64,000 nt of DNA, from assembly GCF_963676685.1 (NCBI RefSeq), contig NC_092344.1, positions 104,656,001 through 104,720,000 on the forward strand. Reading direction: 5' to 3'. Both the position numbers and the translations under genes were made by a program. Of the stretch, positions 1 through 51,840 are shown in pieces. The number at the start of each line of letters is the position of its first letter. The first letter of the stretch is position 1. Source of the stretch: Mytilus edulis. Lineage: Eukaryota. Below the pieces are notes generated by a model that was not told the DNA's origin, made no database searches, and was given only the letters and a program-made list of their open reading frames with translations.

Positions 1-1042
1 AACAAAACGGGGTTCCCAACTGAAATATAGTTCTTATTGCACTAACCACACAATGTGGGAAATAAAAAAGGCAATATGCGACGAAATATATGATAAATTT
101 GGTTATATTAACTAGTTTACTCATATTTTCAGGCTTAAAGCAGAATGAAAATAATTCAAACGGAATCTTAAGCCATTTTATTTTAGTTTTCTTGTCTGGT
201 GGTATCCAAGAATCTGCAAGTGTTAATTGTACTAAAACACACAGGAACAGAAACATGCCTGAGGTAATTATATATGGATCTGTAAAACCTATTAGTTGTA
301 TTAAGTACCCGGTACCTATTTGAAAGCTAACAGAGCCAACGGCAGATAAAGCATCGTATACTGTCATCATTAAAGATCTATCTTTTCCCTCTGAGGTTAC
401 ATCTGCAAGAATAGCGAAGTTTGTTATTTGATATGTATAAAACGATCCTGCAAGCCCTAATATTCCACATGCAATGGTATAATAATATAAATTCATGTTT
501 CTATACACGATTACTGTTTTAAGAATAAATGAAACGAGTGTGATAACTAAATTCCACATCAAAACAGGTTTCCGTCCAATTTTATCAGCGATTGGTCCTG
601 CGAAAACTACGATTGGAAATGAAACACCCGCTTCAGCAATTTGCATGTACCATGACCAGTCTGATGCTAATTGTTGTAGTTGGTCGTCTGATGATGTTGA
701 ATTGGCATCACACGTCTTAAAGTTTTCAGTAGAATTATTCTGTGTTTCATCACGGGTGTCATTTAAAGAATAATTATTTTTTATGTATGAATAAGTAAAT
801 TGTGGTTCGATTGTTGTGGTCACAGTAATCGCACAGTTGTAAATTAATGCATACATCATCACTTTCATTCTTGTACTCATACATTGTGTGTATGTTTTCT
901 CCTTAACTAATAGAACTTCCTTTTCATATGTTTTATCCTTGGCCAATAGAACTTCCTTTTCATATGTTTTATCCTTGGCCAATAGAACTTCCTTTTCATA
1001 TGTGTTATCCTTGGCCAATAGACCTTCTTTTTCATCGTCCAT
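1..1042 (-). CDS. SLC46-family MFS transporter paralog A, first coding exon (3' part runs off window)
   Basis: Absent from the ORF track because its stop lies outside the window. Manual translation from ATG at 1042: MDDEKEGLLAKDNTYEKEVLL...IEPQFTYSY...LASDWSWY...GPIADKIGRKP...IRTIFQLGTPFC, in frame to base 1. Same motifs as the other paralogs. Confidence 0.9.
   Translation of the reverse strand, partial: MDDEKEGLLAKDNTYEKEVLLAKDKTYEKEVLLAKDKTYEKEVLLVKEKTYTQCMSTRMKVMMYALIYNCAITVTTTIEPQFTYSYIKNNYSLNDTRDETQNNSTENFKTCDANSTSSDDQLQQLASDWSWYMQIAEAGVSFPIVVFAGPIADKIGRKPVLMWNLVITLVSFILKTVIVYRNMNLYYYTIACGILGLAGSFYTYQITNFAILADVTSEGKDRSLMMTVYDALSAVGSVSFQIGTGYLIQLIGFTDPYIITSGMFLFLCVLVQLTLADSWIPPDKKTKIKWLKIPFELFSFCFKPENMSKLVNITKFIIYFVAYCLFYFPHCVVSAIRTIFQLGTPFC
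890..1033 (-). repeat. Coding 36-bp minisatellite x4 (EKEVLLAKDKTY)
   Basis: Plus-strand unit aatagaacttccttttcatatgttttatccttggcc repeated about four times, in frame at the N-terminus of paralog A. Confidence 0.95.
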
Positions 1043-12500: not shown

Positions 12501-15322
12501 GTGACCAGAGTGAAAACGTGTATTGTCTAAACTGACTTTCTGTGCTATACAATGAAACTTGGTTGCATTTTACTGATAAAAGAGGGACGAAAGATACCAA
12601 AGGGACAGTCAAACTCATAAATCTAAAACAAACTGACAACGCCATGGCTAAAAATGAAAAAGACAAACAGAAAAACAATAGTACACATGACACAACATAG
12701 AAAACTAAAGAATAAACAACACGAACCCCACCAAAAACTAGGGGTGATCTCAGGTGCTCCGGAAGGGTAAGCAGATCCTGCTCCACATGTGGCACTCGTC
12801 GTGTTGCTTATGTGATTATAAATCCGGTAAATAGTCTAATTCGGTAGGTCACATTCATGAAAGGGAAGGGGATTGTAGTTACGACGTAAGGAACATATCC
12901 GATATCATTTGTGAAACGGTTATTCCATAACGGTCAACCAACTCGTGATGGCGTCCGTAAAATTTACGAAGGGATGATTTCAACTTCACCATTTGGAACT
13001 CTTGGTTTAATAGCTTCCTTGTGAGCAGTAACCCTCTATCAAGAAAATCATGATAGGAAATGCAAGCACGGGAATATCGTATCAATTGGGAGATATATAC
13101 CCCGTATGCAGGTGCTGCTGGAATGTTGCTACTTAGAAATGGAAAGTTCACAATTGGAAAGCTGAAATCATCTCTTTTGTCGTAATGTTTTGTTTTCAAC
13201 TGACCCTCATTGTCAATTTCTAGATGTAAGTCAAGATATGAAGCCGACTTAACTGTATCTGTAGTATCCTTTATCTCCAATTCGATGGGATAGATGCGTT
13301 CCACATAGTGACCAAATTTTGAATTATGTAGTAAAAGAACGTCATCTATATAGCGGAAAGTAGAGTTAAAGGATATTGCTAACTTCTTATCTTTCTTCCT
13401 AAGAAGTTCCTGCATGAAGTCAGCCTCATAATAATAAAGAAACAAGTCGGCAAGTAGAGGGGCACAGTTTGTTCCCATTGGGATGCCGACAGTCTGTTGA
13501 AAAACACGTCCTCCGAACGTTACAAATATGTTGTCAAACAAGAAATCAAGCATCTTGATAATATCGGTTTCAGAGAATTTTTTGTTTGAATCAGAGTGAT
13601 TCTTTACAAAGTATGATTTATCCCTCCCTAAGACAAGATACTTGTATCTACGTTGGCCATTCTTTTTTATGAAGCAAAGTAATACCAACTCTTTTAAATT
13701 GTCTTTTAGTTTGGAATGTGGAATACTTGTGTACAGAGTAGACAAGTCAAATGTTTTAATACTGTTACAAGATGAAAGAGAGTTAGATTGTATGATAAAA
13801 GTCATGGCTATATATAAGGGCGAAAAATGATGTGGGCTCTTCTGGGATGAATTTGTTATCTAATAATAACATAAGGAATTTGTTATGTATAGAATGTCCT
13901 CACGATTTGTTCTTATTGTGTAATATTCGAAAAGTTTCAGTACTTCAATAATTGTTTGTCAAATCCACTTTATTATTGAAATACTGAAACTATTCTAATA
14001 TTACACAATTAAAGAGAAGATTTAAGGTTCTAACTTCCAGAGTTATCTTTAGATAATTTGTCTACTGTGGTGTCCCATTTGGTAATAATTATCTTCAAGT
14101 ATTCATTCATCCCTTGACTGTAATTGTTTTGGTTTTGAGCGTTCCTGATTAGACTTAATAGACCGCATCAAATGTATAGTTATATTTTCGTTACCTTACC
14201 TATATAAATCATTGAATCATCAGTTGAAAATCCGAACAGAACAAAACATGCTACACCAGATAGCATGCAAAAGATTGAAATCACGTCATCATTTAGACGA
14301 ACACAGCATACGTGTAGAAATTTGATCACGAAACCGCCTAAAATATATACTGTACAATTGGTTATAGTGTTGTACCATCCAATATGTTCCGAAGTCCAAC
14401 AAAAAGGTTCGCCTAAGATATAAATTGTTCTTATCGAGAAAGCACCATTCATGGGCAAGTAATAAAGACAGTACACAACAAAATATAATATAAGAAATCT
14501 GACGTAATGTTTGCTATTTTGTTTTGATGATTTCCATAATGTGAACAACTGTCCTGGAATTTCGCGGAAACGGAGTGTTGATGTAATTTCTTGTGGTTTC
14601 CACGGATCTTTAAGAGTAATGGTGATTAAGATTAACAGAGAGAGCATTAGTCCTGATGATATAAGATAAGGGTAAGAAAAACCAACAAGTTGTATCAAAT
14701 ATCCAGTACCGACTTGAGAGCATGCAGTCCCAAGTCCAAGGAGTGCTTCATAAACAACAAGCACGAAAGATCTTTCTTTTCCTTCTGACGTGCAATCTGC
14801 CAAAATTGCAATATTGGCTAAATGAAAAACGTAAAAATTTCCAGATAAACCCAGAATTCCACAAGCAACAACATAGTAATATAAATGTAAATTCATGTAA
14901 ACAATTGTTGTTTTTAAAGCAAGTGATACACATACTAACAAAACGTTCCAAAGAATAAGAGGTTTTCGTCCAATTTTATCTGCCATTGGACCTACAAACA
15001 TTAAAACCGGAAGTGCAAATCCAGCCTGTGCTAACGAAATATACCACGACCAATTTGAGGTTAAACCTTGGATTTTGTCATCAGAAGCTGATGTTGAATT
15101 GATGATACATGCCTTTTGTGCTTGTAGAGAATCGTTAGCTGCTTTGAAGTCGGTAGAATTTGTAACACTTTTTAAATACGCATATATATACTGTGGTTCA
15201 GCTTGGCCAGATGTTTCAAATGCACAACCATAAATCATCACATAAACCACCACCCGTAATTGAGTACCAAAACTTCCGAATGATTTATCATGTTCTTTTA
15301 AAAGAGGTTTCGTTTCCTCCAT
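9559..15322 (-). CDS. SLC46-family (PCFT/SLC46A3-like) MFS transporter paralog B, 4 exons, ~486 aa
   Basis: Exons 15322-14200, 11435-11352 (84 nt), 10658-10502 (157 nt), 9655-9559; all GT..AG with consistent phases. Motifs GPMADKIGRKP, LGEPFCW..HIGW, IKAVLSRLVSKDKQGVLFS, FNNIY; ends EKTELLQ*. Confidence 0.9.
10770..11100 (+). mobile_element. Degenerate retroelement gag-like fragment (possibly DIRS/Ngaro) in intron 2 of paralog B
   Basis: DNKDDAVNLRSAISRANSRRR followed, after frameshifts, by a G/N/R-rich stretch and CFYCNQPG(Q), a zinc-knuckle remnant. Confidence 0.4.
12577..13795 (-). mobile_element. Penelope-like element reverse transcriptase, 5'-truncated, with 3' UTR
   Basis: ORF 12879-13805: FDLSTLYTSIPH, QQTVGIPMGTNCAPLLADLFL, FRYIDD, YLDL, YDKRDDFSFPIVNFPFLSSNIP..AYGVYISQLIRYSRAC. 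No C-terminal GIY-YIG. Lies in intron 1 of paralog B. Confidence 0.88.
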
Positions 15323-32321: not shown

Positions 32322-33512
32322 TTTGTTACTTATGACTCTGAATCTAGATCAGTTATCTTATCAAATTGATTATATTTCCCTTGTTGATTCAGATAAAATA
32401 GATAAACCCGTTAACATTTGACACAATAACATTTATTTTTTGATACATTTCATACCTCGTGAATGCTTTGTGAAATGATTTATGGCAAATTATATGTAAT
32501 TGAGCGGTATTTCAGATTTGCATGCAGTTGATAATAGCGGTTTGTTACAGTAACAAAAAATCTTTAATTGTCATTTTGTTATAAACTTCATAAAGATTGA
32601 ATATATAGATCAAAAACTTACTCAGAAGACTACAAAAGAAGCAAAAAGAACTTTCGTTCGTTTTCTTAGATTTCTTGTATTTTTTTTTCATATTATAGTA
32701 TGTATACTGAGGATATTCTACACTCAGTAATAGGGTGTATTTGTCAATTTCGGAATGTTTGGTCTTTGACGCTTCTTTGCTTTGTACTATATTTGGATTT
32801 TTGTTTGGCTTTTTTGTTCGAGCGTTACTAATGGGTAAAACTATATCGTTTTAAAATGTCTTTTCGTCAGTATTGATTTTCATTTCAGAAGAAATTAATA
32901 CATTTTGAGAACCTTTTTTATATTCCTTTGTATAATATATTATTTAGAACTCATATCCATACAATGTCATATTGATACCATTTTGACTATAGAACTTCAT
33001 AAAAAAAGACTGCAATACTTAAAGTAATTGGAGATAATGATAATTTTGATTTGTCAAGATACATTTTATTATAACTCATATATACCGGTATTATAGCTTT
33101 AAAAAATATTGATAGTTCGGTCCAAAAAAAAAAGAATCCCAACGAATGCACTGTTCGAAGCGGAAATCTCGTCTGGGTCTGTATCAGTATGTTATAACAC
33201 CTTCAAAATTTGATACACACAGTGCTAATTAAAAGGTAGTGCACTGATCGAAGCGGAAATCTCGTCAGGGTCTGTATCAGTATGTTATAATACCTTCAGA
33301 ATTTGTTACACACAGTGCTAATTCAAAGGTAGGGATGATGGATCTGTAATTCGGACCATCTAGACATTGACATGTAGTATAGACACATTTCTCTTGTTAA
33401 TATTGTATGTCTACATCTTCTTTCATTCATTTTACATAAATGCTTTTTTTTTATAAAATGATTAGAATATTTTTATCTGGTATATTTTTGTACAGATTAT
33501 AGCCCCTTTTGC

Positions 33513-36500
33513 TTAGTTTTTTGCGATAACAAGTGTATCTTCCTTCTGTGATTTCTCAAGATTTTCGTCACAATCGCAATTTTCTTTCCGGTTCTGAACT
33601 GTTGGTTCTTCAACTTTAATCTCGATTTTATCTGATTGAGTGTTTCTGCATGTCACGCACCTGAAATGTAAATGAATATATCGTGATACGTCAAGGGATA
33701 TTATAAGTATAACCCTTTTATATTATAAACAAATTTGCAGCTATTAGATAATTTTACCTGTACCTTTGAAAACTATTTACCTACTACTCCATATACAATT
33801 CAAGCAGTCGGTAATATATTCAAGACAAAGAACCTATGAATATCTTTTTTTTTCGTTTTTTTTTGTAAATACTGCAAGCAGGCAAGTAAGAATGTAAATA
33901 TATTCAAAGCGAAATAACTAAATTGTTATTAATTAGAAAATATAGATAGTTAACAAAAAAAACAGAAATTTACATCCTATACCCATCTTTCAACTGACTG
34001 TAAAATCTTAATAATATATCTCAAAATTGACAAATTAATGAACTCAAATTAGGTCACAAATAGACAATATCAATATCTCCGATTGTTGAAGACTTCTTAC
34101 GATTAATTGAAATAATTTTCATATTTATATAATTCGTATATGATTTGCATATCTGCAATTTGTCCAACTGATTTTTCCTTGGTTTACTCTTCAGTAAATC
34201 ATGCTGTCGAAACCACTTCTTAACCTATATTAACACTGTACCACAGCCATGCCCAATACACAAGATCAAATCCTGGGGTTTACACACCAGGAACTTCCCC
34301 AAAATAATGGGTTTATCTAACAGTTACTTCACACAGCTGTTTGACGTTTTACAATAAATGAATTGACTGTTCGGCGTGCCTGCATAAATTTAAATATTCA
34401 TATTTCATATGTGGAGCAGGATCTGCCTATCCTTTCGGAGTACCTGAGATCACTCCTGGTTTTTTGTGGGGTTCGTGTTGCTTATTCTTTAGTTTTCTAT
34501 GTTGTGTCGTGTGTACTATTGTTTATCTGTTTGTATATTTCATTTTTAGATATAGCGTTGTCAGCTTTTTTTTCGATTTATGAGTTTGACTATCCCTCTG
34601 GTATCTTTTGTCCCTTTTTTGTATCCTAGTAGTTTATATTTTATTGATAGTAATTGGTAAAATAAGGTTTGAGCTTTTTTGTTCTCACGGCAAAATCATA
34701 CTAACAAATGTTCTTTAACGCAAAATAAGGCATTCTCTTTTAAATGTCTTACTGAAGTATGCATTCAACAGGAAATAATCTGCACGAAAATTGAAATACA
34801 TCTCTAGTTAATATTTACTCACATTAAGAGAATACCAGCACACAATGGAAATAAAGCCATAACAAAGAATACCATGCCTTTAAATATCGGACGAGTGTGG
34901 TGGTATATATTGTTAAATAATGTGGAACCACCCAGTCGGCACACAGCTTCTAGTAAGTATATATTAGCAAAAAGTGCTCCTGTAATGAAAAATATGGTAG
35001 TAAAAAAGGCAAATAGATCTGTCTTCTTAAAATCAAAAGATAGTAACTGACCATTAATCTTTTATAGAGAGGAAATGGTTTTTAAGTGAATTGTTTGATT
35101 TTGGTGTTTTTAAACAAATATGATTTGTTTCAGAAGGAAATTGAAAAATAATATATTGATTTCATTTTAAAATTCTAACAAAAATATCGAACTCCAAGGC
35201 CAATTCATATTATAAATCAACGGAAAGAGGAAAAGAAAACTGCCATATTCCTAACTTGGCACAGGCATTTTACGAAGAAATGCTTCAATTGTATATATGC
35301 TTCATTGAAATATTTTGAAAAGTGTTTACCTTGTTTGTCTGAATGGACCATTCGAGAAAGGATTGACTTTATTATCGGTATTGGTAATATTCTGATGACA
35401 CCAATGGCAGTAGCTGAAATGGAAATCATTGATTTAATTTATCTACAAACACAATATAAGAATGGGTATTATATATCTTACTCTTTTCGTGTTCACGCAA
35501 ACAAATTAAACAATGCAAACCCACGAGCATTGCTATATATTATAAATCCATTTCGTGTAAGTATTTTGAAGGCATAACATGAGTCTTCACAATATCAACA
35601 TGATAAGCCTGGTATCTGCCATGAGTTCAGTTTGTTGATTTCTTCTCTATCGACAAAAAGTATCTTTACAAACAGATTTTTTTTATAAACACTACCATAT
35701 AGTACTGATTTTCTAATGACACTGAGATGTTAGTATTTGGCAAACACTTATTTATAGCAATACATTTGTAAAATGTCCAAAAGGAAAACATGATTTGGAA
35801 TGGACAAGAGTCAGATCTATCGATAGCCATACTAAAACTATTTAAACCATGAAGAAAATAAACAAACGTGAAATTAAATTCTTCTATATTGTATAATATA
35901 CAAATCAGAATTCTTAGCAACACATTCTTAAAAGACACAACTCAAGAATTTACCAAGGTAAATCATCCAATCGGTTGACGAGAATCCAAACACAATGTAA
36001 CACGTTACTGAAGAAGTGAATCCCAAAAAGGCTATTGTATGGTCCTTCATACAAAGAAGAAAAGATTTAAGAATCAAGATTCCAATGACAAATTCACAAA
36101 AATATGCTGCAGCTGTATACCATCCTACTTTGACAGAAGTCCAGCAAAGAGGAGCTCCAAGCTCATATAATGTTCTTATACCTCCGTTTGCCAAATAAGG
36201 AAATTCATTTGTAAAGTATACAAGTATATACATCAGAAATAATTGTCTAGTAGAATTCATTAATATGTTTGTCTTTCTACACAGTGAACATACGTCAATA
36301 AATGAAGACGATATGTTTACAGGATTCTTCTTGATTGGTAATTTAGAGTTTTCCTTCAGTGTGATGATAATTAAAATAAGAATTAAAACTAATAACGCAG
36401 TTCCTGTAAGGAATGGGTATGTGTATCCAGTCAGCTTGATAAGGTAACCAGTCGCTATATCAGAAACACAAATGCCAATTACCATCATGGTATCAAATAG

Positions 36501-37073
36501 TGCTATATTGAATGGTTTAGATTCATCTTGGTTTGTACATGTGTTAAGTATTGAAAGACAAATAACATCATATGTATAATGGCAACCAGCTAAACCCTCC
36601 ACAACGCAAAATAGAAGGTACCAGTATAGATTCAGTTTTGCATACACAGCATATGTCCGCAATGCGAATGTTATAGCAAAGAGAGAGACAGTGTACATAA
36701 GAACTGGTTTCCGACCCACTTTATCCGACAAAGGTCCTAAAACAGACATAACAAGCAATCCAATACTGTAAATCACAAGTTGCATATACCAAGTCCAGTC
36801 CGATGCTAATCCCTGAATGTAATCGTCTGTTATAGATGTCAAATTGTTACTGCAACTCATCTCTTTTATCGAATTATTATATTGTTCTACCGATGTGTGA
36901 TTAGTTGATGCATAGTAAGCCTTAAGGTACGAATATATGTATTGCGTTTCTGATATGTTCAGCATTTCAAGAGAACATCCCCAGATGATGGTATAAATAC
37001 ATATTTTAATACGAGCGTCAAACCAGGATAACTTCTTGTCTATTTTCGCGATCAGTATTTGTTGCTCATCCAT
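33513..37073 (-). CDS. SLC46-family MFS transporter paralog E, 4 exons, ~502 aa
   Basis: Exons 37073-35954, 35413-35330 (84 nt), 34979-34823 (157 nt), 33660-33513. Motifs GPLSDKVGRKP, LGAPLCWTSVKVGW, IKSILSRMV. Confidence 0.9.
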
Positions 37074-38111
37074 ATTTACTATAATTATGATCGTTGTTGA
37101 AATCCAGAGGCAAATATATCAAGCATCTTCGAAATCAGCACGACGTTTTTATTTTGTATGTTTATATTTTGTAATCCGTATATTCAATTTACTCAGAATG
37201 TATTTGTGTAGAAAAGATAAAAATTAAAGTGTGTAGTGTAGATTATTTTCTGTATATCATTGTGAATTGTAATAATTATATTTTGATAAATAAGCACATG
37301 TTTATATCTGTAATCAACTACTGTAACACATGATGTTGTAGTCCTTTCCTTTATGTACATGCATACCTACTGATATAAATGTTTAGAACTACATGTATCG
37401 CCAAAACGATACCTTTTGATTTCAGTCTATTAATTTTTTATTACTTTGTAAACAACTAGGGCCCAAATTTGTCACAAAGACGTGCTCTCAATAATTTTAA
37501 GTGAAACAAATACAAAAAATAAACGTTACAAGTCCATTATATTTTAGGTTGAGTATCAAAAGAGTATTCAAATCTAGTTTAATAATTATATTAATATGTC
37601 TGTACCAGGTCAGAAAACTTGTCAATGGTTGTATTTGTTTATTTCTTTGTTTTTTTTCGTCTTTAGTATTGGGCATATCTTCAGTAGTCTTTAAGATTAA
37701 TTTATTCAAAGCCTTGCTAGTCATAATTTTTAATGCTTAATTAAGTTTTGATTATTTTTTTTTATTTTTCACATTTTTTGCATTTTATATAACAGCGGTG
37801 GCCATTTCAGAAATTTCGTACCATTCCAACCTATTTTTCTAGATATACTCATTTTGATAAATCTTTTTCCTGGATTCATGTTTCATTGTTTTGTGTCATC
37901 ATTGGCATATACCGTGAATCTTTTTTATTTATAATATTAGAAATGCTAGTAACCAATGAATATCTGAATATAAAGGTTAATCACTTTCGATTAATTCTTA
38001 TTTGATAAAACTGAAACATATGCCGCACTTAATAATCGACTTGACCAAACTTATGTACTTATGTAACGTTACAATAAGTAAATTGTTTTGAAATGTGTAA
38101 AGACAACTCAC

Positions 38112-39213
38112 CACCATATATCATCCAGTCAGCTGAACAAAATCCGTACAGCACAAAACTTGCCAATGTAGACGTGTATCCAAGCATTGCAATTGCATAT
38201 CCTTTAACACAAGATAGCAGACCTTTTAGAATAACTGTCCCAATTACTAGTTCACCAGTGGCAAGTGCTGCACTAAACCATCCTATATGAACAGAAGACC
38301 AACAAAATGGTGGTCCTAAGATAAACAACAGTCGAATTGTAGAGTTTGCTGAAAGTGGCAAAAGATGAAAAAGGTATATGGTATAATACACACATAAATA
38401 CTTAATGTTGTTACTCACTAATGCATTTTTATTGGAAAAAATAACGCAAAGATTTTTTGGGAGTGATAATACGTCGACTGTTTTCTTATTGGTATTGTCT
38501 TCAAGTGTTAATATAATAAGTATAAGTACAAGACACAGACATCCAATTGATACAAGATAGGGATATGTATATCCTGAAAATTTGATAACATATCCTACTC
38601 CAATCTGTGAGATACTCATTCCTATCCCCATCATGGCGTCATAAACAGCTAGTACAAATGGTCGTTCTTTGTTTGGTTTGGTAGAGTTTGTAAGAACCGC
38701 ACTACAAGTTAGATGATATACATAGTGACATCCAGATATACCTTCCACTGCACTGAATCCAACGTACCAGTAAAGATTTAAATCTTCATATATTGCATAG
38801 GCTCTAGCAGCGTATGATAAAATTGTAATCATTAAATTATACATTAACACAATTTTTGCTCCTTTAATGTCGGACATTGGACCTGCTATTACCAGTACCG
38901 GTAAACATATGCCATATGTCACAAGTTGAATGTACCACGTCCAGTCGGATGCTAAACTTTGTATATAGTCATCATTCTCTCCAGTCATATTTCCTGGACA
39001 GTTCTGTTCGGTTAAATTGTTTGACGTGGATTCGTAGGTAGTGTTTTTATTTGTGTGGTGTTTCTTTAAATATGAATACACATATTGTGTTTCAGTAACA
39101 CTTTGGATTTCCAATGCACATCCATGAATCATTACAAATATACACAATTTAGTACGAACATCAAACCAGCTACTTCTTGCATCTTTTGTTAACAATTTTT
39201 GACGCTCATCCAT
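38112..39213 (-). CDS. SLC46-family first exon F (367 codons, ~TM1-9) with no dedicated downstream exons
   Basis: Uninterrupted ORF from MDERQKLL to DWMIYG; phase-1 donor G|GTGAG at 38112/38111. No 84-nt or 157-nt exon homologue seen between 38111 and 37074. Confidence 0.85.
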
Positions 39214-39419
39214 GTTACCTTTTTAATATTCAGTCCATGGATTTATTATTTTCATATCAATGATTACGTGAAAATCGTTTATTTGGGCAGTAGATTAAAA
39301 TTAATTTCAGTTTTGCAATATTTATATCACACTATCATGTATGTTTGTATACGTATAAATAGAATGAAGATAACGTTAACCATGAAGACCTTCATAAACT
39401 TTACACGTGCTGTTGTTAA

Positions 39420-49382: not shown

Positions 49383-50837
49383 TTATAATCTATCATAATC
49401 TGGATTGTTTTCTACCTGAAGTCGTTTTAAACTTTCCATATCATATTCCGGTACTGTGTCACTGTATCTAACCACATTCGTTGGTGGAACCGATTCAGAT
49501 TTCCGTTCGTTGCGTTTCCAGGCTTGCTGTTTGATTTTGTTACCTGTTTGTAGGTCGGTTGCAGGTACATTTCTAGCATGAGCGATTTCCAAAGACTGCA
49601 TGTCTAGATGATATCGACTTCCGGTATCGCGCGTCTTGGTTTGATCGTCTTTTTTCGAAGCCGATAGTGCAGACCGAATATTCACTGAATTGGCATCCAA
49701 TTTTCCTCCTTTGTGCGTTTCTTCACTTCCACGAATTTGTTCATTAACTTTGTCTAATTTTGGTGCCAATAATGCACCTTTTATTAAAACAGAATTGGCA
49801 TCGATATGAATTGGCTGTGAAGAACCCTGGTCACAGTGTGATTTGCAGTATACGTGTATATCCAAATCGTAAATTTTATTATGACAAAAATTCTTCAAAT
49901 TTAGTTTTGTCCCACATGTTTTGCACGTAAAGCACCCCTTATGGTATACAACATCTTTAACTGGTCCTATCTTTTCCATCGGGTATACCTTTTTCATACA
50001 ACGATAGCACTTATCTTGAGGATATTTAGTTTCGATTTTCAACGATGAAGCCCTTGTTGGAACTTTTTGAACATTTGTGGTTTGTGGTTCACTAAAATGT
50101 CGAACAAGAATTGGCGATTTTGGCGAGTTGGGTCCTGGGCTGTTATCTGAGAACGATAAGTTCTGCATTCCTATTCCACTCGACGACGGCGAAGCAGGTC
50201 CAGATGATGTCGTACTGCTGGTTTCAGACAACATTATCTGTCGTCTTGTGGTAGTGTTTGGTGTATTGGGGGATGATAAATTCACTGGTGTTGATACGAA
50301 TTGTGGACTTCTTGGAGAATACTGTGGTTCTTCATAGTTTTGATAGCCCTCAATATCTCTTCGAACAGTTTTTCTCAAGTCTACAGCAGATGGTATATTG
50401 TTCTGAAGTTGTAACATAAGAGTAAGTTGTTGTTTCGATTCATTACTAGAAGGATCAAAAGACTGACCTGACAACATTGACTGTTGGAAAACTCCTGGGT
50501 TTGAACTGTCCATTGTCGACTGTGGGAATGGCATGTAAGACGTCGGATATGTCGGTGAAATTGGTAATACTCCCGCCATAAGTCCAGAAGATGTTGGCAC
50601 AAAGTTTGGCATTGATTGAAAAATATTGGGTGATGTCACATTCTGGCTCTGATATAAATCAGGCTGAAGTCCATTTGTTAGTGTTAAATTTCCCATTTGA
50701 GCGTTTAATTGCATTTGTTGAAAAGCTAGTAATTGTTCAGGTGTAAAAGTCGTACCAGTCACATTCTGTTGTTGAGGCAAAGCATTAAAATGTCCAGAAC
50801 TGCTCAAACTTTGGTTTAAATTATAATTCACATCCAT
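49383..50837 (-). CDS. Intronless Hillarin-like single-LIM-domain protein (~484 aa)
   Basis: Q/S/P-rich N-half; LIM CYRC..KVYPMEKIGP...YHKGCFTCKTCGTKL...VYCKSH followed by ...APKLDKVNEQIRG, recalled as the Hillarin N-terminal LIM region. First ATG at 50837; the ORF-track start at 50843 is TTG. Confidence 0.8.
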   Translation of the reverse strand: MDVNYNLNQSLSSSGHFNALPQQQNVTGTTFTPEQLLAFQQMQLNAQMGNLTLTNGLQPDLYQSQNVTSPNIFQSMPNFVPTSSGLMAGVLPISPTYPTSYMPFPQSTMDSSNPGVFQQSMLSGQSFDPSSNESKQQLTLMLQLQNNIPSAVDLRKTVRRDIEGYQNYEEPQYSPRSPQFVSTPVNLSSPNTPNTTTRRQIMLSETSSTTSSGPASPSSSGIGMQNLSFSDNSPGPNSPKSPILVRHFSEPQTTNVQKVPTRASSLKIETKYPQDKCYRCMKKVYPMEKIGPVKDVVYHKGCFTCKTCGTKLNLKNFCHNKIYDLDIHVYCKSHCDQGSSQPIHIDANSVLIKGALLAPKLDKVNEQIRGSEETHKGGKLDANSVNIRSALSASKKDDQTKTRDTGSRYHLDMQSLEIAHARNVPATDLQTGNKIKQQAWKRNERKSESVPPTNVVRYSDTVPEYDMESLKRLQVENNPDYDRL

Positions 50838-51840
50838 TTTCAAAACAGGTGGAATTTATATAAAAGTCAAATAAATGGCAAGAATTTAAACAGGTGTTGT
50901 GCGGTAGACCTGAGTATTTCTTTTAAACGAATTACTGTCCTCGTTTTATTGTGCCGTATATACACTTGTAAGAAATGACATACGGTGGGTAAGATTTCAG
51001 TGTCATGCTTGGCAGATTCACACCAATCATAAACAACTTATTACCTGATTATTTTTCATTGTTCGGGGGAGATTTTTAAACCGTATATTCTTATTATTGC
51101 ATTGTGTATTTAAAGAAAACAATCAACATCTTAAAGAAAGGCGATTTTAAGGATTGATATTAAAAGGAATTTCACTACTTTGATTTTAAATCTGTTCATA
51201 ATATCAACTTATCCATCTAGCTGATTATATATCTGCCTATCGATAGAATAATAACTATCTAATAATTTATTAAACTATATGCCTAATTTGTCTTTCCAAG
51301 CCATTAATTTCTTTTATCATATACTTAGACTAAATAACATATGATTTTTACCGTATGATAATAGCATTAAATTAAAGTATTTTCCATAATCTTCGAATTT
51401 ATGCTTAGCGGGCTGATATGAAAAGTTTATCACATGCTTCGATTGTTATCACATGCCTTTCCGTAACGTTATCACATGGCATTCCGGTGGTACTCGGCAA
51501 TTTCCGGAATTTTTTTTTTAAATATTAAATGAATGCATTTTTTAAAGTTTTTCTGAAACATGACTTAAAAAGTTACTTTAAAAAAGTTGACTTTTCCAAA
51601 CAATGTTCATTATGTATATTGTTGAATTATTTTTCTGTCGATTGGCCCTTATAAAAAATAAATGTTTTTTTTTCTCTATTGAGGCATATGATAGAAAGAT
51701 TTCATATTGAATGTATCAAATTTTGGGTCCGACGTCCGTGAACTTTTTACTCTTTCAACTTCTTTTCGGGAACCACCTAGAAGGATCAATATATGAATCT
51801 GTTGTTTTTCTTTACTGTTGAAGCATATGATAAAAAGATC

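What the first reader, a model, noticed from the sequence alone, without database searches (positions are those of the whole stretch)
33513..39213. Orphan but intact SLC46 first exon: candidate UGT1A/protocadherin-style variable-first-exon transporter locus
Seen: exon F (39213-38112) is a stop-free 367-codon ORF with its own ATG, sorting motif and canonical phase-1 GTGAG donor. It lies only ~1 kb upstream of the paralog E ATG, and no exon 2, 3 or 4 homologue is visible in between, whereas paralogs B-E each have their own set. Inference: F splices over E's first exon to the shared exons 35413-35330, 34979-34823 and 33660-33513, giving a ~496-aa transporter with variable TM1-9 on a constant TM10-12 and tail. 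All five visible first-exon donors are phase 1 at the same position, so cross-paralog chimeras are frame-compatible across the array. Established: UGT1A and clustered protocadherins use this logic; I do not know of it for SLC46. Alternatives: a recent partial duplication (unlikely given strong F/E divergence with an open frame), a 384-aa read-through product, or splicing to the weak AG at 37080-37079, which would fuse F in frame to all of E.
Basis: partly seen in the sequence, partly recalled or inferred. Interest (0 to 1): 0.88.

Follow-up and report, generated by a model that had tools for sequence, protein, structure and literature searches.

The report
Mussel transporter gene with two first exons

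Summary
The window is Mytilus edulis chromosome 1. Exon F (39213-38112, minus strand) is an intact 367-codon first exon with a phase-1 GTGAG donor and no exons 2-4 of its own.

- **Splicing:** an RNA contig from a public run joins 38112 directly to 35413 and runs on into exon 3, so E's first exon is skipped.
- **Existing annotation:** RefSeq already holds exactly this 496-aa product, XP_071143713.1. It also holds the E1 form, XP_071143702.1 (isoform X1), and the same pair in M. galloprovincialis.
- **Constraint:** F1 is as conserved across four Mytilus species as E1 (91-94% against 89.5-95% aa). Allelic pN/pS is about 0.19, and the one indel seen is in frame. The F lineage is old.
- **Scale:** the whole array has 10 first exons and 9 sets of later exons, so F is the only orphan. 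This is a two-member variable-first-exon unit like UGT2A1/2, not a UGT1A-sized locus.

No cross-paralog chimera, F+E fusion or read-through was seen. Cross-paralog joints could not be tested with reads. Separate promoters are inferred, not shown. Interest is modest.

The parts
38112..39213 (-). Variable first exon F: ATG at 39213, 367 codons plus 1 base, roughly TM1-9 of an SLC46-like MFS transporter
   Evidence: ORF and translation; Pfam MFS_1 at 1.4e-10; 100% identical to the first 367 residues of RefSeq XP_071143713.1; covered by RNA contigs in runs X1, X2 and X3
38107..38111 (-). F1 splice donor GTGAG, phase 1
   Evidence: Sequence; used in the X2 contig that joins 38112 to exon 2
37074..38106 (-). 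About 1 kb spacer between F1 and E1. It is intronic in the F isoform and is the inferred site of E's own promoter
   Evidence: No SLC46-like coding remnant on the minus strand; zero read depth in the RNA contig runs. The promoter role is inferred, not shown
35954..37073 (-). Variable first exon E: ATG at 37073, 373 codons plus 1 base, phase-1 donor GTAAA
   Evidence: ORF; 45% aa identity to F1; equals the first 373 residues of RefSeq XP_071143702.1 isoform X1; skipped in the F transcript
35330..35413 (-). Shared exon 2 (84 nt, start of TM10), behind a TTTCAG acceptor
   Evidence: Joined to 38112 in X2 record 13, with one synonymous SNP at 35412; joined to exon 3 in X1, X2 and X3
34823..34979 (-). 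Shared exon 3 (157 nt)
   Evidence: Joint 34978-35329 in three runs and joint 33657-34820 in X1, with GT..AG ends on the minus strand
33513..33660 (-). Shared exon 4: coding part with the cytoplasmic tail and TAA stop
   Evidence: Sequence; identical C-terminus in both RefSeq isoforms; X1 contigs cover it

Best explanation
F1 (39213-38112) and E1 (37073-35954) are two alternative first coding exons of one Mytilus edulis SLC46-like major-facilitator transporter gene.

**How the two forms arise.** Each exon has its own ATG and an N-terminal acidic dileucine-type motif, and each encodes about three quarters of the protein (roughly TM1-9). Each ends in a phase-1 donor at the same codon position. 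A transcript that starts upstream of F1 uses the F1 donor and splices to the first real acceptor downstream, exon 2 at 35413. E1 is removed as part of a 2698-base intron. A transcript that starts in the 1 kb spacer gives E1 plus exons 2-4. The products are 496 aa (F form) and 502 aa (E form) and share TM10-12 and the tail.

**Shown:** the F1-to-exon-2 junction in RNA; the absence of F-specific later exons; purifying selection on F1; the same arrangement in other Mytilus assemblies.

**Inferred:** separate promoters; that both products are working transporters with different substrate or kinetic properties.

**A difference in F.** The motif-A arginine that corresponds to human PCFT R113 is alanine in F.
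For: **Junction.**: X2 contig record 13 (376 nt) lies on 38357-38112, then 35413-35329, then continues into exon 3. The skipped part ends in GT..AG on the minus strand. The two 'between' letters are exon 2's own first two bases, carrying a synonymous T>C change.

**Expression.**: F1 and exons 2-4 are covered in three probable RNA runs from three studies. E1 and the spacer have no depth in those runs.

**Database models.**: RefSeq XP_071143713.1 (M. edulis, 496 aa) matches F1 100% over its first 367 residues and shares its last 129 residues with the E isoform, as the E exon translations show. XP_076080694.1 (M. galloprovincialis, isoform X2) has the same architecture. The E1 forms XP_071143702.1 and XP_076080687.1 are labelled isoform X1.

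**Only one orphan.**: 10 first exons and 9 exon 2-3 sets in the array; only F lacks its own set.

**Constraint.**: F1 is 91-94% identical across M. galloprovincialis, M. trossulus and M. coruscus, against 89.5-95% for E1 and 88-99% for the constant part; 11 synonymous and 8 nonsynonymous allelic differences plus an in-frame 3-nt indel give pN/pS of about 0.19, with binomial p = 0.0004 against neutrality.

**Age.**: F, E and D form a clade with 99/97 support, and each has a more distant relative, so F is an old lineage.

**Family.**: the only solved relative is the proton-coupled folate transporter 7BC6 (E = 2.8e-26).
Against: - The junction rests on one low-depth contig (depth 3.9) in one run whose RNA nature is a guess by the tool, although intron-skipping joints show that it holds spliced RNA.
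- The runs were chosen because they hold F, so the absence of E1 reads says nothing about relative use of the two exons.
- No transcription start site data exist here. Both ATGs are preceded by an AG 5 nt upstream, so a shared upstream non-coding exon with mutually exclusive choice cannot be excluded.
- The E1-to-exon-2 joint was not seen in reads. It rests on RefSeq models, which are automatic.
- F carries Ala where motif A has a functionally important Arg (PMC4794783), so normal transport activity is not assured.
- The AlphaFold model was unusable (pLDDT 34).
- The raw-read RNA run X24 showed no reads on either isoform.
Confidence: 0.8

Rival explanations
1. There is one promoter and the choice is mutually exclusive. 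F1 and E1 are not true first exons: both are spliced to a shared upstream non-coding exon, and one of the two is chosen by splicing rather than by promoter use.
For: Both ATGs sit 5 nt after an AG: AAAAAG|GTAAC-ATG in F and TTATAG|TAAAT-ATG in E. No start-site data are available.
Against: Paralogs C and B have no AG close to the ATG, and in D it lies 7 nt upstream, so this is not a conserved acceptor. The pyrimidine tract before F's AG is poor. The X1 contig runs 6 nt past that AG without a loose end. If E1 had a working acceptor, F1 would splice into it in frame, yet E1 has zero depth where F1 is expressed.
Confidence: 0.12
2. Array-wide variable-exon usage in the UGT1A or protocadherin style. 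First exons across the ten-gene array also splice to constant exons of downstream paralogs and give a combinatorial set of chimeric transporters.
For: All paralogs share orientation, donor position and phase 1, so chimeras would be in frame.
Against: Nine of the ten first exons have their own exons 2-3 immediately downstream. No protein in the searched databases combines one paralog's first exon with another paralog's later exons. The one F1 junction observed goes to the nearest exon 2. Cross-paralog joints lie outside the stretch that could be laid, so they were not tested with reads.
Confidence: 0.05
3. F1 is a functionless relic of a partial duplication or of a gene that lost its 3' exons, and its splicing to exon 2 is transcriptional noise.
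For: F lacks its own later exons. It has lost the conserved motif-A arginine. Expression evidence is low-depth.
Against: The frame is open over 366-367 codons in four species. Protein conservation equals that of E1. pN/pS is about 0.19 and the indel is in frame. The F branch lengths in the tree resemble those of E and D. Two alleles about 4.5% apart in DNA over the 596-nt X1 contig are both found in RNA contigs from three studies.
Confidence: 0.04
4. Assembly collapse or an F+E fusion. Either F's own exons 2-4 were lost by misassembly at 37074-38111, or F1 joins the AG at 37080-37079 to make an 871-aa tandem transporter.
For: An older M. galloprovincialis annotation fused F and E into a 787-aa model, VDI58022.1.
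Against: F lies next to E without F-specific later exons in the models of at least three other assemblies: M. galloprovincialis RefSeq, the older M. galloprovincialis assembly, and M. coruscus with consecutive accessions. No protein of 433-1377 aa other than that old model was found. There is no read depth on E1 or the spacer in runs that express F1.
Confidence: 0.02

Closest known systems
Small multiple-variable-first-exon clusters of vertebrates (UGT2A1/UGT2A2, GCNT2), as reviewed in PMC1885805
   Same: Two or three tandem, homologous, large first exons each encode the specificity-determining front of the protein. Each is spliced to one shared set of downstream constant exons, skipping the intervening variable exon. 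They evolve by birth-and-death duplication of the first exon.
   Different: Here the protein is a 12-helix membrane transporter, and the swap point lies inside the C-terminal six-helix bundle (at about TM9/TM10) rather than between two folded domains. The organism is a bivalve. Separate promoters are not shown.
UGT1A and clustered protocadherin loci
   Same: Same splicing logic: the 5'-most transcribed variable exon's donor joins the first constant acceptor, and downstream variable exons are removed as intron.
   Different: Those loci have roughly 9-13 (UGT1A) or 14-22 (each Pcdh cluster) variable exons per constant set (my own knowledge), with promoter choice shown experimentally. This locus has two. 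The other eight paralogs in the array are complete genes.
SLC46 family (SLC46A1/PCFT, SLC46A2, SLC46A3)
   Same: MFS fold family. The only solved relative found is PCFT 7BC6 (E = 2.8e-26). NCBI names the proteins SLC46A3-like or PCFT-like. The N-terminal acidic dileucine-type motif fits a lysosomal/endosomal SLC46A3-like location.
   Different: I found no paper that describes variable first exons in any SLC46 gene. The F form replaces the motif-A arginine (human PCFT R113 equivalent) by alanine.

Membership tests
SLC46 / major facilitator superfamily | Significant match to the MFS_1 profile | tested here: met
   F1 at 41.1 bits and E1 at 46 bits, against a cut-off of 33.4.
SLC46 / major facilitator superfamily | Closest characterised relatives are SLC46 members | tested here: met
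   the only PDB hit is the proton-coupled folate transporter 7BC6/7BC7, E = 2.8e-26, over residues 74-446. RefSeq names are SLC46A3-like and PCFT-like.
SLC46 / major facilitator superfamily | Motif A between TM2 and TM3 (G-x-x-x-D-x-x-G-R-[RK]) with the charge-relay arginine | tested here: not met
   E and D have ...SDK-x-GRKP.... F has ...SDIKGAKI..., so Asp is kept and Arg is replaced by Ala. The three other Mytilus F orthologues show the same change. The motif is met for the E isoform and not for the F isoform. The importance of R113 is taken from PMC4794783.
SLC46 / major facilitator superfamily | Twelve transmembrane helices in two six-helix bundles | tested here: inconclusive
   The AlphaFold2 model had pLDDT 34. 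The crude hydropathy scan and the PCFT alignment place the exon 1/2 boundary at the start of a hydrophobic helix (residues 364-386), taken to be TM10.
Multiple-variable-first-exon gene (UGT1A / Pcdh / UGT2A / GCNT2 type) | Two or more tandem homologous first exons, each with its own ATG, upstream of a single set of constant exons | tested here: met
   F1 and E1 are 45% identical, each has its own ATG, and there is one set of exons 2-4.
Multiple-variable-first-exon gene (UGT1A / Pcdh / UGT2A / GCNT2 type) | The upstream variable exon splices directly to the first constant exon, skipping the downstream variable exon | tested here: met
   the X2 contig joins 38112 to 35413 and continues into exon 3. 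RefSeq isoforms agree.
Multiple-variable-first-exon gene (UGT1A / Pcdh / UGT2A / GCNT2 type) | Each variable exon has its own promoter | not testable with these tools
   No CAGE or 5'-end data. The only raw-read run laid (X24) had no reads on the gene.
Multiple-variable-first-exon gene (UGT1A / Pcdh / UGT2A / GCNT2 type) | Large repertoire of variable exons on one constant set (UGT1A/Pcdh scale) | tested here: not met
   10 first exons and 9 constant sets, so only the F/E pair shares one.

The most novel reading that the evidence does not exclude
The F/E pair is a conserved, promoter-driven, two-member variable-first-exon unit in an invertebrate solute carrier. It swaps TM1-9 on a constant TM10-12 and tail. 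That swap includes the substrate cavity residues of the N-bundle and a broken motif-A charge relay in the F form. The two products would have different transport or sensing properties in the lysosome/endosome. Low-level splicing into downstream paralogs might extend the repertoire.
Probability: 0.35. Interest if true: 0.45.

Novelty: new member of a known kind. Interest (0 to 1): 0.3.

Why it matters
The variable-first-exon design is usually discussed for vertebrate UGT and protocadherin genes. This case shows it in a mollusc membrane transporter, with the swap point inside the C-terminal helix bundle. TM1-9 of either of two versions only 45% identical must therefore pack against the same TM10-12. 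That makes a natural experiment on MFS modularity, and a simple test case for promoter choice against splice choice in bivalves. In practical terms it confirms an automatic RefSeq isoform with independent transcript evidence. It also warns annotators that old models either fused F with E or cut F short as a read-through ORF.

Tried and rejected
Orthologous DNA from M. galloprovincialis, M. coruscus and M. trossulus could not be fetched, so no codon-based dN/dS was run. I used protein identities and allelic SNPs from laid contigs instead.
- **AlphaFold2** on the RefSeq F isoform with a 15-row alignment gave pLDDT 34. I discarded it and ran no fold search.
- **Raw-read RNA run X24** gave no reads on F or E exons, only on intronic repeats. 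It is uninformative.
- **Read-through product (384 aa):** no depth at 38059-38111 in the runs laid.
- **F1 to the AG at 37080-37079 (fusion to E):** no depth on E1 and no long fusion protein apart from one old model.
- **Cross-paralog chimeras:** none among database proteins that carry E-like or D-like C-termini.
- **Rfam scan of the window:** nothing.
- **Literature:** no paper links SLC46 with alternative or variable first exons.
- **Earlier scan notes:** only one unrelated note, on this same window.
- **Joined models:** Exons were searched one by one by reference, and the full-length sequences used are database entries.
Full report
**What is there.** The window is AT-rich animal DNA. A protein search with exon F returned RefSeq proteins of Mytilus. 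XP_071143713.1 of M. edulis is 100% identical to the window's F1 over its first 367 residues. Its last 129 residues are identical to those of the E isoform and match my translations of E exons 2-4. It lies on a 126,317,657-base record. The genome search places the window at C1:104656001-104720000 of that assembly.

On the minus strand lies a tandem array of SLC46-like major-facilitator genes.
- F has its ATG at 39213 and 367 codons plus one base to 38112, then GTGAG.
- E1 is 37073-35954 (phase 1, GTAAA).
- Exon 2 is 35413-35330, behind TTTCAG.
- Exon 3 is 34979-34823.
- Exon 4 is 33660-33513, ending in TAA.

tblastn with each E exon separately finds exon 2 and 3 homologues behind E1, D1, C1 and B1. 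It finds nothing between F1 and E1 and nothing upstream of F. The donors of F, E, D, C and B fall at the same codon position and phase.

**Is the junction real?** I had one reads call. It went on 33400-39350 with three Logan-contig runs that hold exon F (three studies) and one raw RNA run.
- Run X2 contains a 376-nt contig lying on 38357-38112, then on 35411-35329, then on into exon 3.
- The two letters the aligner left 'between' are exon 2's own first two bases with one synonymous change (GCT to GCC, Ala). The true joint is therefore 38112|35413, and the removed 2698 bases run from GT to AG.
- Joints exon 2-exon 3 (three runs) and exon 3-exon 4 (one run) show that these runs hold spliced RNA.
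- In all three, F1 and exons 2-4 are covered. E1, the F-E spacer and the read-through stretch 38059-38111 have no depth.
- Because the runs were picked for holding F, this says that F transcripts skip E1. It does not say that E1 is silent.
- The raw-read run had no reads on either isoform.

**Independent models.** NCBI's pipeline already models both forms:
- E1 plus exons 2-4 is isoform X1: XP_071143702.1 in M. edulis and XP_076080687.1 in M. galloprovincialis, both 502 aa.
- F1 plus exons 2-4 is XP_071143713.1 (496 aa) and XP_076080694.1 (isoform X2, 495 aa).

In M. coruscus the F and E models carry consecutive accessions on one scaffold. An older M. galloprovincialis annotation fused F with E (787 aa). 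M. trossulus has an F-part plus exons 2-4 model. F therefore sits directly upstream of E in several independent assemblies, which argues against an assembly collapse. Exons were searched singly by reference, and the full-length sequences used are database entries.

**Is F1 under constraint?**
- F1 is 93.2%, 93.7% and 91.0% identical to its M. galloprovincialis, M. trossulus and M. coruscus counterparts. E1 gives 95.4%, 94.9% and 89.5%. The constant part gives 99%, 98% and 88%.
- The X1 contig carries the M. galloprovincialis-type allele. Of its 19 listed differences in F1, 11 are synonymous and 8 are not, and the one indel is 3 nt. That gives pN/pS of about 0.19. The chance of so few nonsynonymous changes under neutrality is 0.0004, or 0.03 with a conservative site ratio.
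- In a maximum-likelihood tree of first exons, D, E and F form a clade (99/97). Each has a more distant relative of unknown source, and the F branches are no longer than those of E or D.

F is therefore an old, constrained lineage, not a recent partial duplicate.

**How big is the system?** A six-frame search of the whole genome and a reconstruction of 120 kb around the window show 10 first exons and 9 sets of exons 2-3 in one orientation on C1:104.626-104.695 Mb. F is the only first exon without its own set, and it is the 5'-most member. Searches for proteins carrying E-type or D-type C-termini, and for long fusions, found no cross-paralog chimera and no 871-aa F+E product. The design is thus a two-member variable-first-exon unit, comparable to UGT2A1/2 or GCNT2, which PMC1885805 lists beside UGT1 and protocadherins. 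It is not a UGT1A-scale locus.

**Mechanism.**
- *Shown:* the F1 donor joins the exon 2 acceptor and E1 is removed as intron.
- *Inferred:* F and E have separate promoters, with E's in the 1 kb spacer, and E1 is skipped because it lacks a used acceptor.
- *Rival:* a shared upstream non-coding exon with mutually exclusive choice cannot be excluded, since an AG lies 5 nt before each ATG. That AG is not conserved in C or B and lies 7 nt upstream in D, and it is not used by F transcripts in the runs laid.

**Family.** Pfam gives MFS_1. The only solved relative is chicken PCFT 7BC6 (E = 2.8e-26). The exon 1/2 boundary falls at the start of a hydrophobic helix taken to be TM10. The AlphaFold model was too poor to use.

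One difference stands out. In motif A, F has Ala where E, D and PCFT have the arginine equivalent to human PCFT R113. PMC4794783 describes that residue as part of a D109-R113-D170 charge relay important for function. The three other Mytilus F orthologues share the change, while the more distant F-like relatives keep Arg.

**Novelty and verdict.** No paper in the library links SLC46 with variable or alternative first exons. One preprint only uses a Mytilus SLC46A3 gene as a qPCR marker. The gene model itself is already in RefSeq. I file it as a new member of a known kind.

Noticed in passing
window 38857-38871 (F residues 115-119): In all four Mytilus F orthologues the motif-A arginine (human PCFT R113 equivalent) is alanine, and the following proline is replaced (Ile in three, Asn in M. 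coruscus). E, D, chicken PCFT and the more distant F-like proteins P0003-P0005 keep Arg-Lys-Pro or Arg-Arg-Pro.
   Followed up: partly
window 38627-39225: Two F1 alleles about 4.5% apart in DNA over the 596-nt X1 contig (7% in protein across all of F1) both occur in RNA contigs. The window-type allele also appears in an older M. galloprovincialis assembly (VDI58022.1, 99.5%), while RefSeq M. galloprovincialis carries the other. This suggests shared polymorphism or introgression within the M. edulis complex.
   Followed up: partly
window 34395-34792 and about 35191-35389: Intronic repeats inside gene E have very high summed depth in RNA contigs (hundreds to thousands) and many loose ends. This points to a dispersed, transcribed repeat family, not to expression of this locus. 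Rfam gives no match.
   Followed up: no
window 890-1042 (N-terminus of paralog A, ATG at window 1042): Paralog A's first exon begins with a thrice-repeated unit of about 12 residues, each containing an E-x-x-L-L-type dileucine motif.
   Followed up: partly
window 12879-13805 (-): A 308-aa ORF in intron 1 of paralog B has a reverse-transcriptase match just under the Pfam cut-off (29.2 against 29.6 bits). It is probably a retroelement remnant.
   Followed up: no
window 49383-50843 (-): A 486-aa uninterrupted ORF with a LIM domain (E = 5e-6) lies about 10 kb upstream of F on the same strand. It is unrelated to the array.
   Followed up: no
G000:C1:104626000-104633400 (L001, L004): The two 3'-most array members have first exons split into two frames, one with an in-frame TGA. 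They are probable pseudogenes or intron-containing variants.
   Followed up: no
G000:C9:71923001-71931000 (L009): An SLC46-like copy on another chromosome has several in-frame stops in its first exon and two exon-3-like pieces. It is probably a pseudogene.
   Followed up: no
P0002 (XP_063419634.1, M. trossulus): This RefSeq model joins F residues 1 to about 241 directly to exon 2, omitting TM7-9. It could be an internal donor, an assembly gap or a model artefact. A second M. trossulus model (P0024) is the read-through ORF.
   Followed up: no
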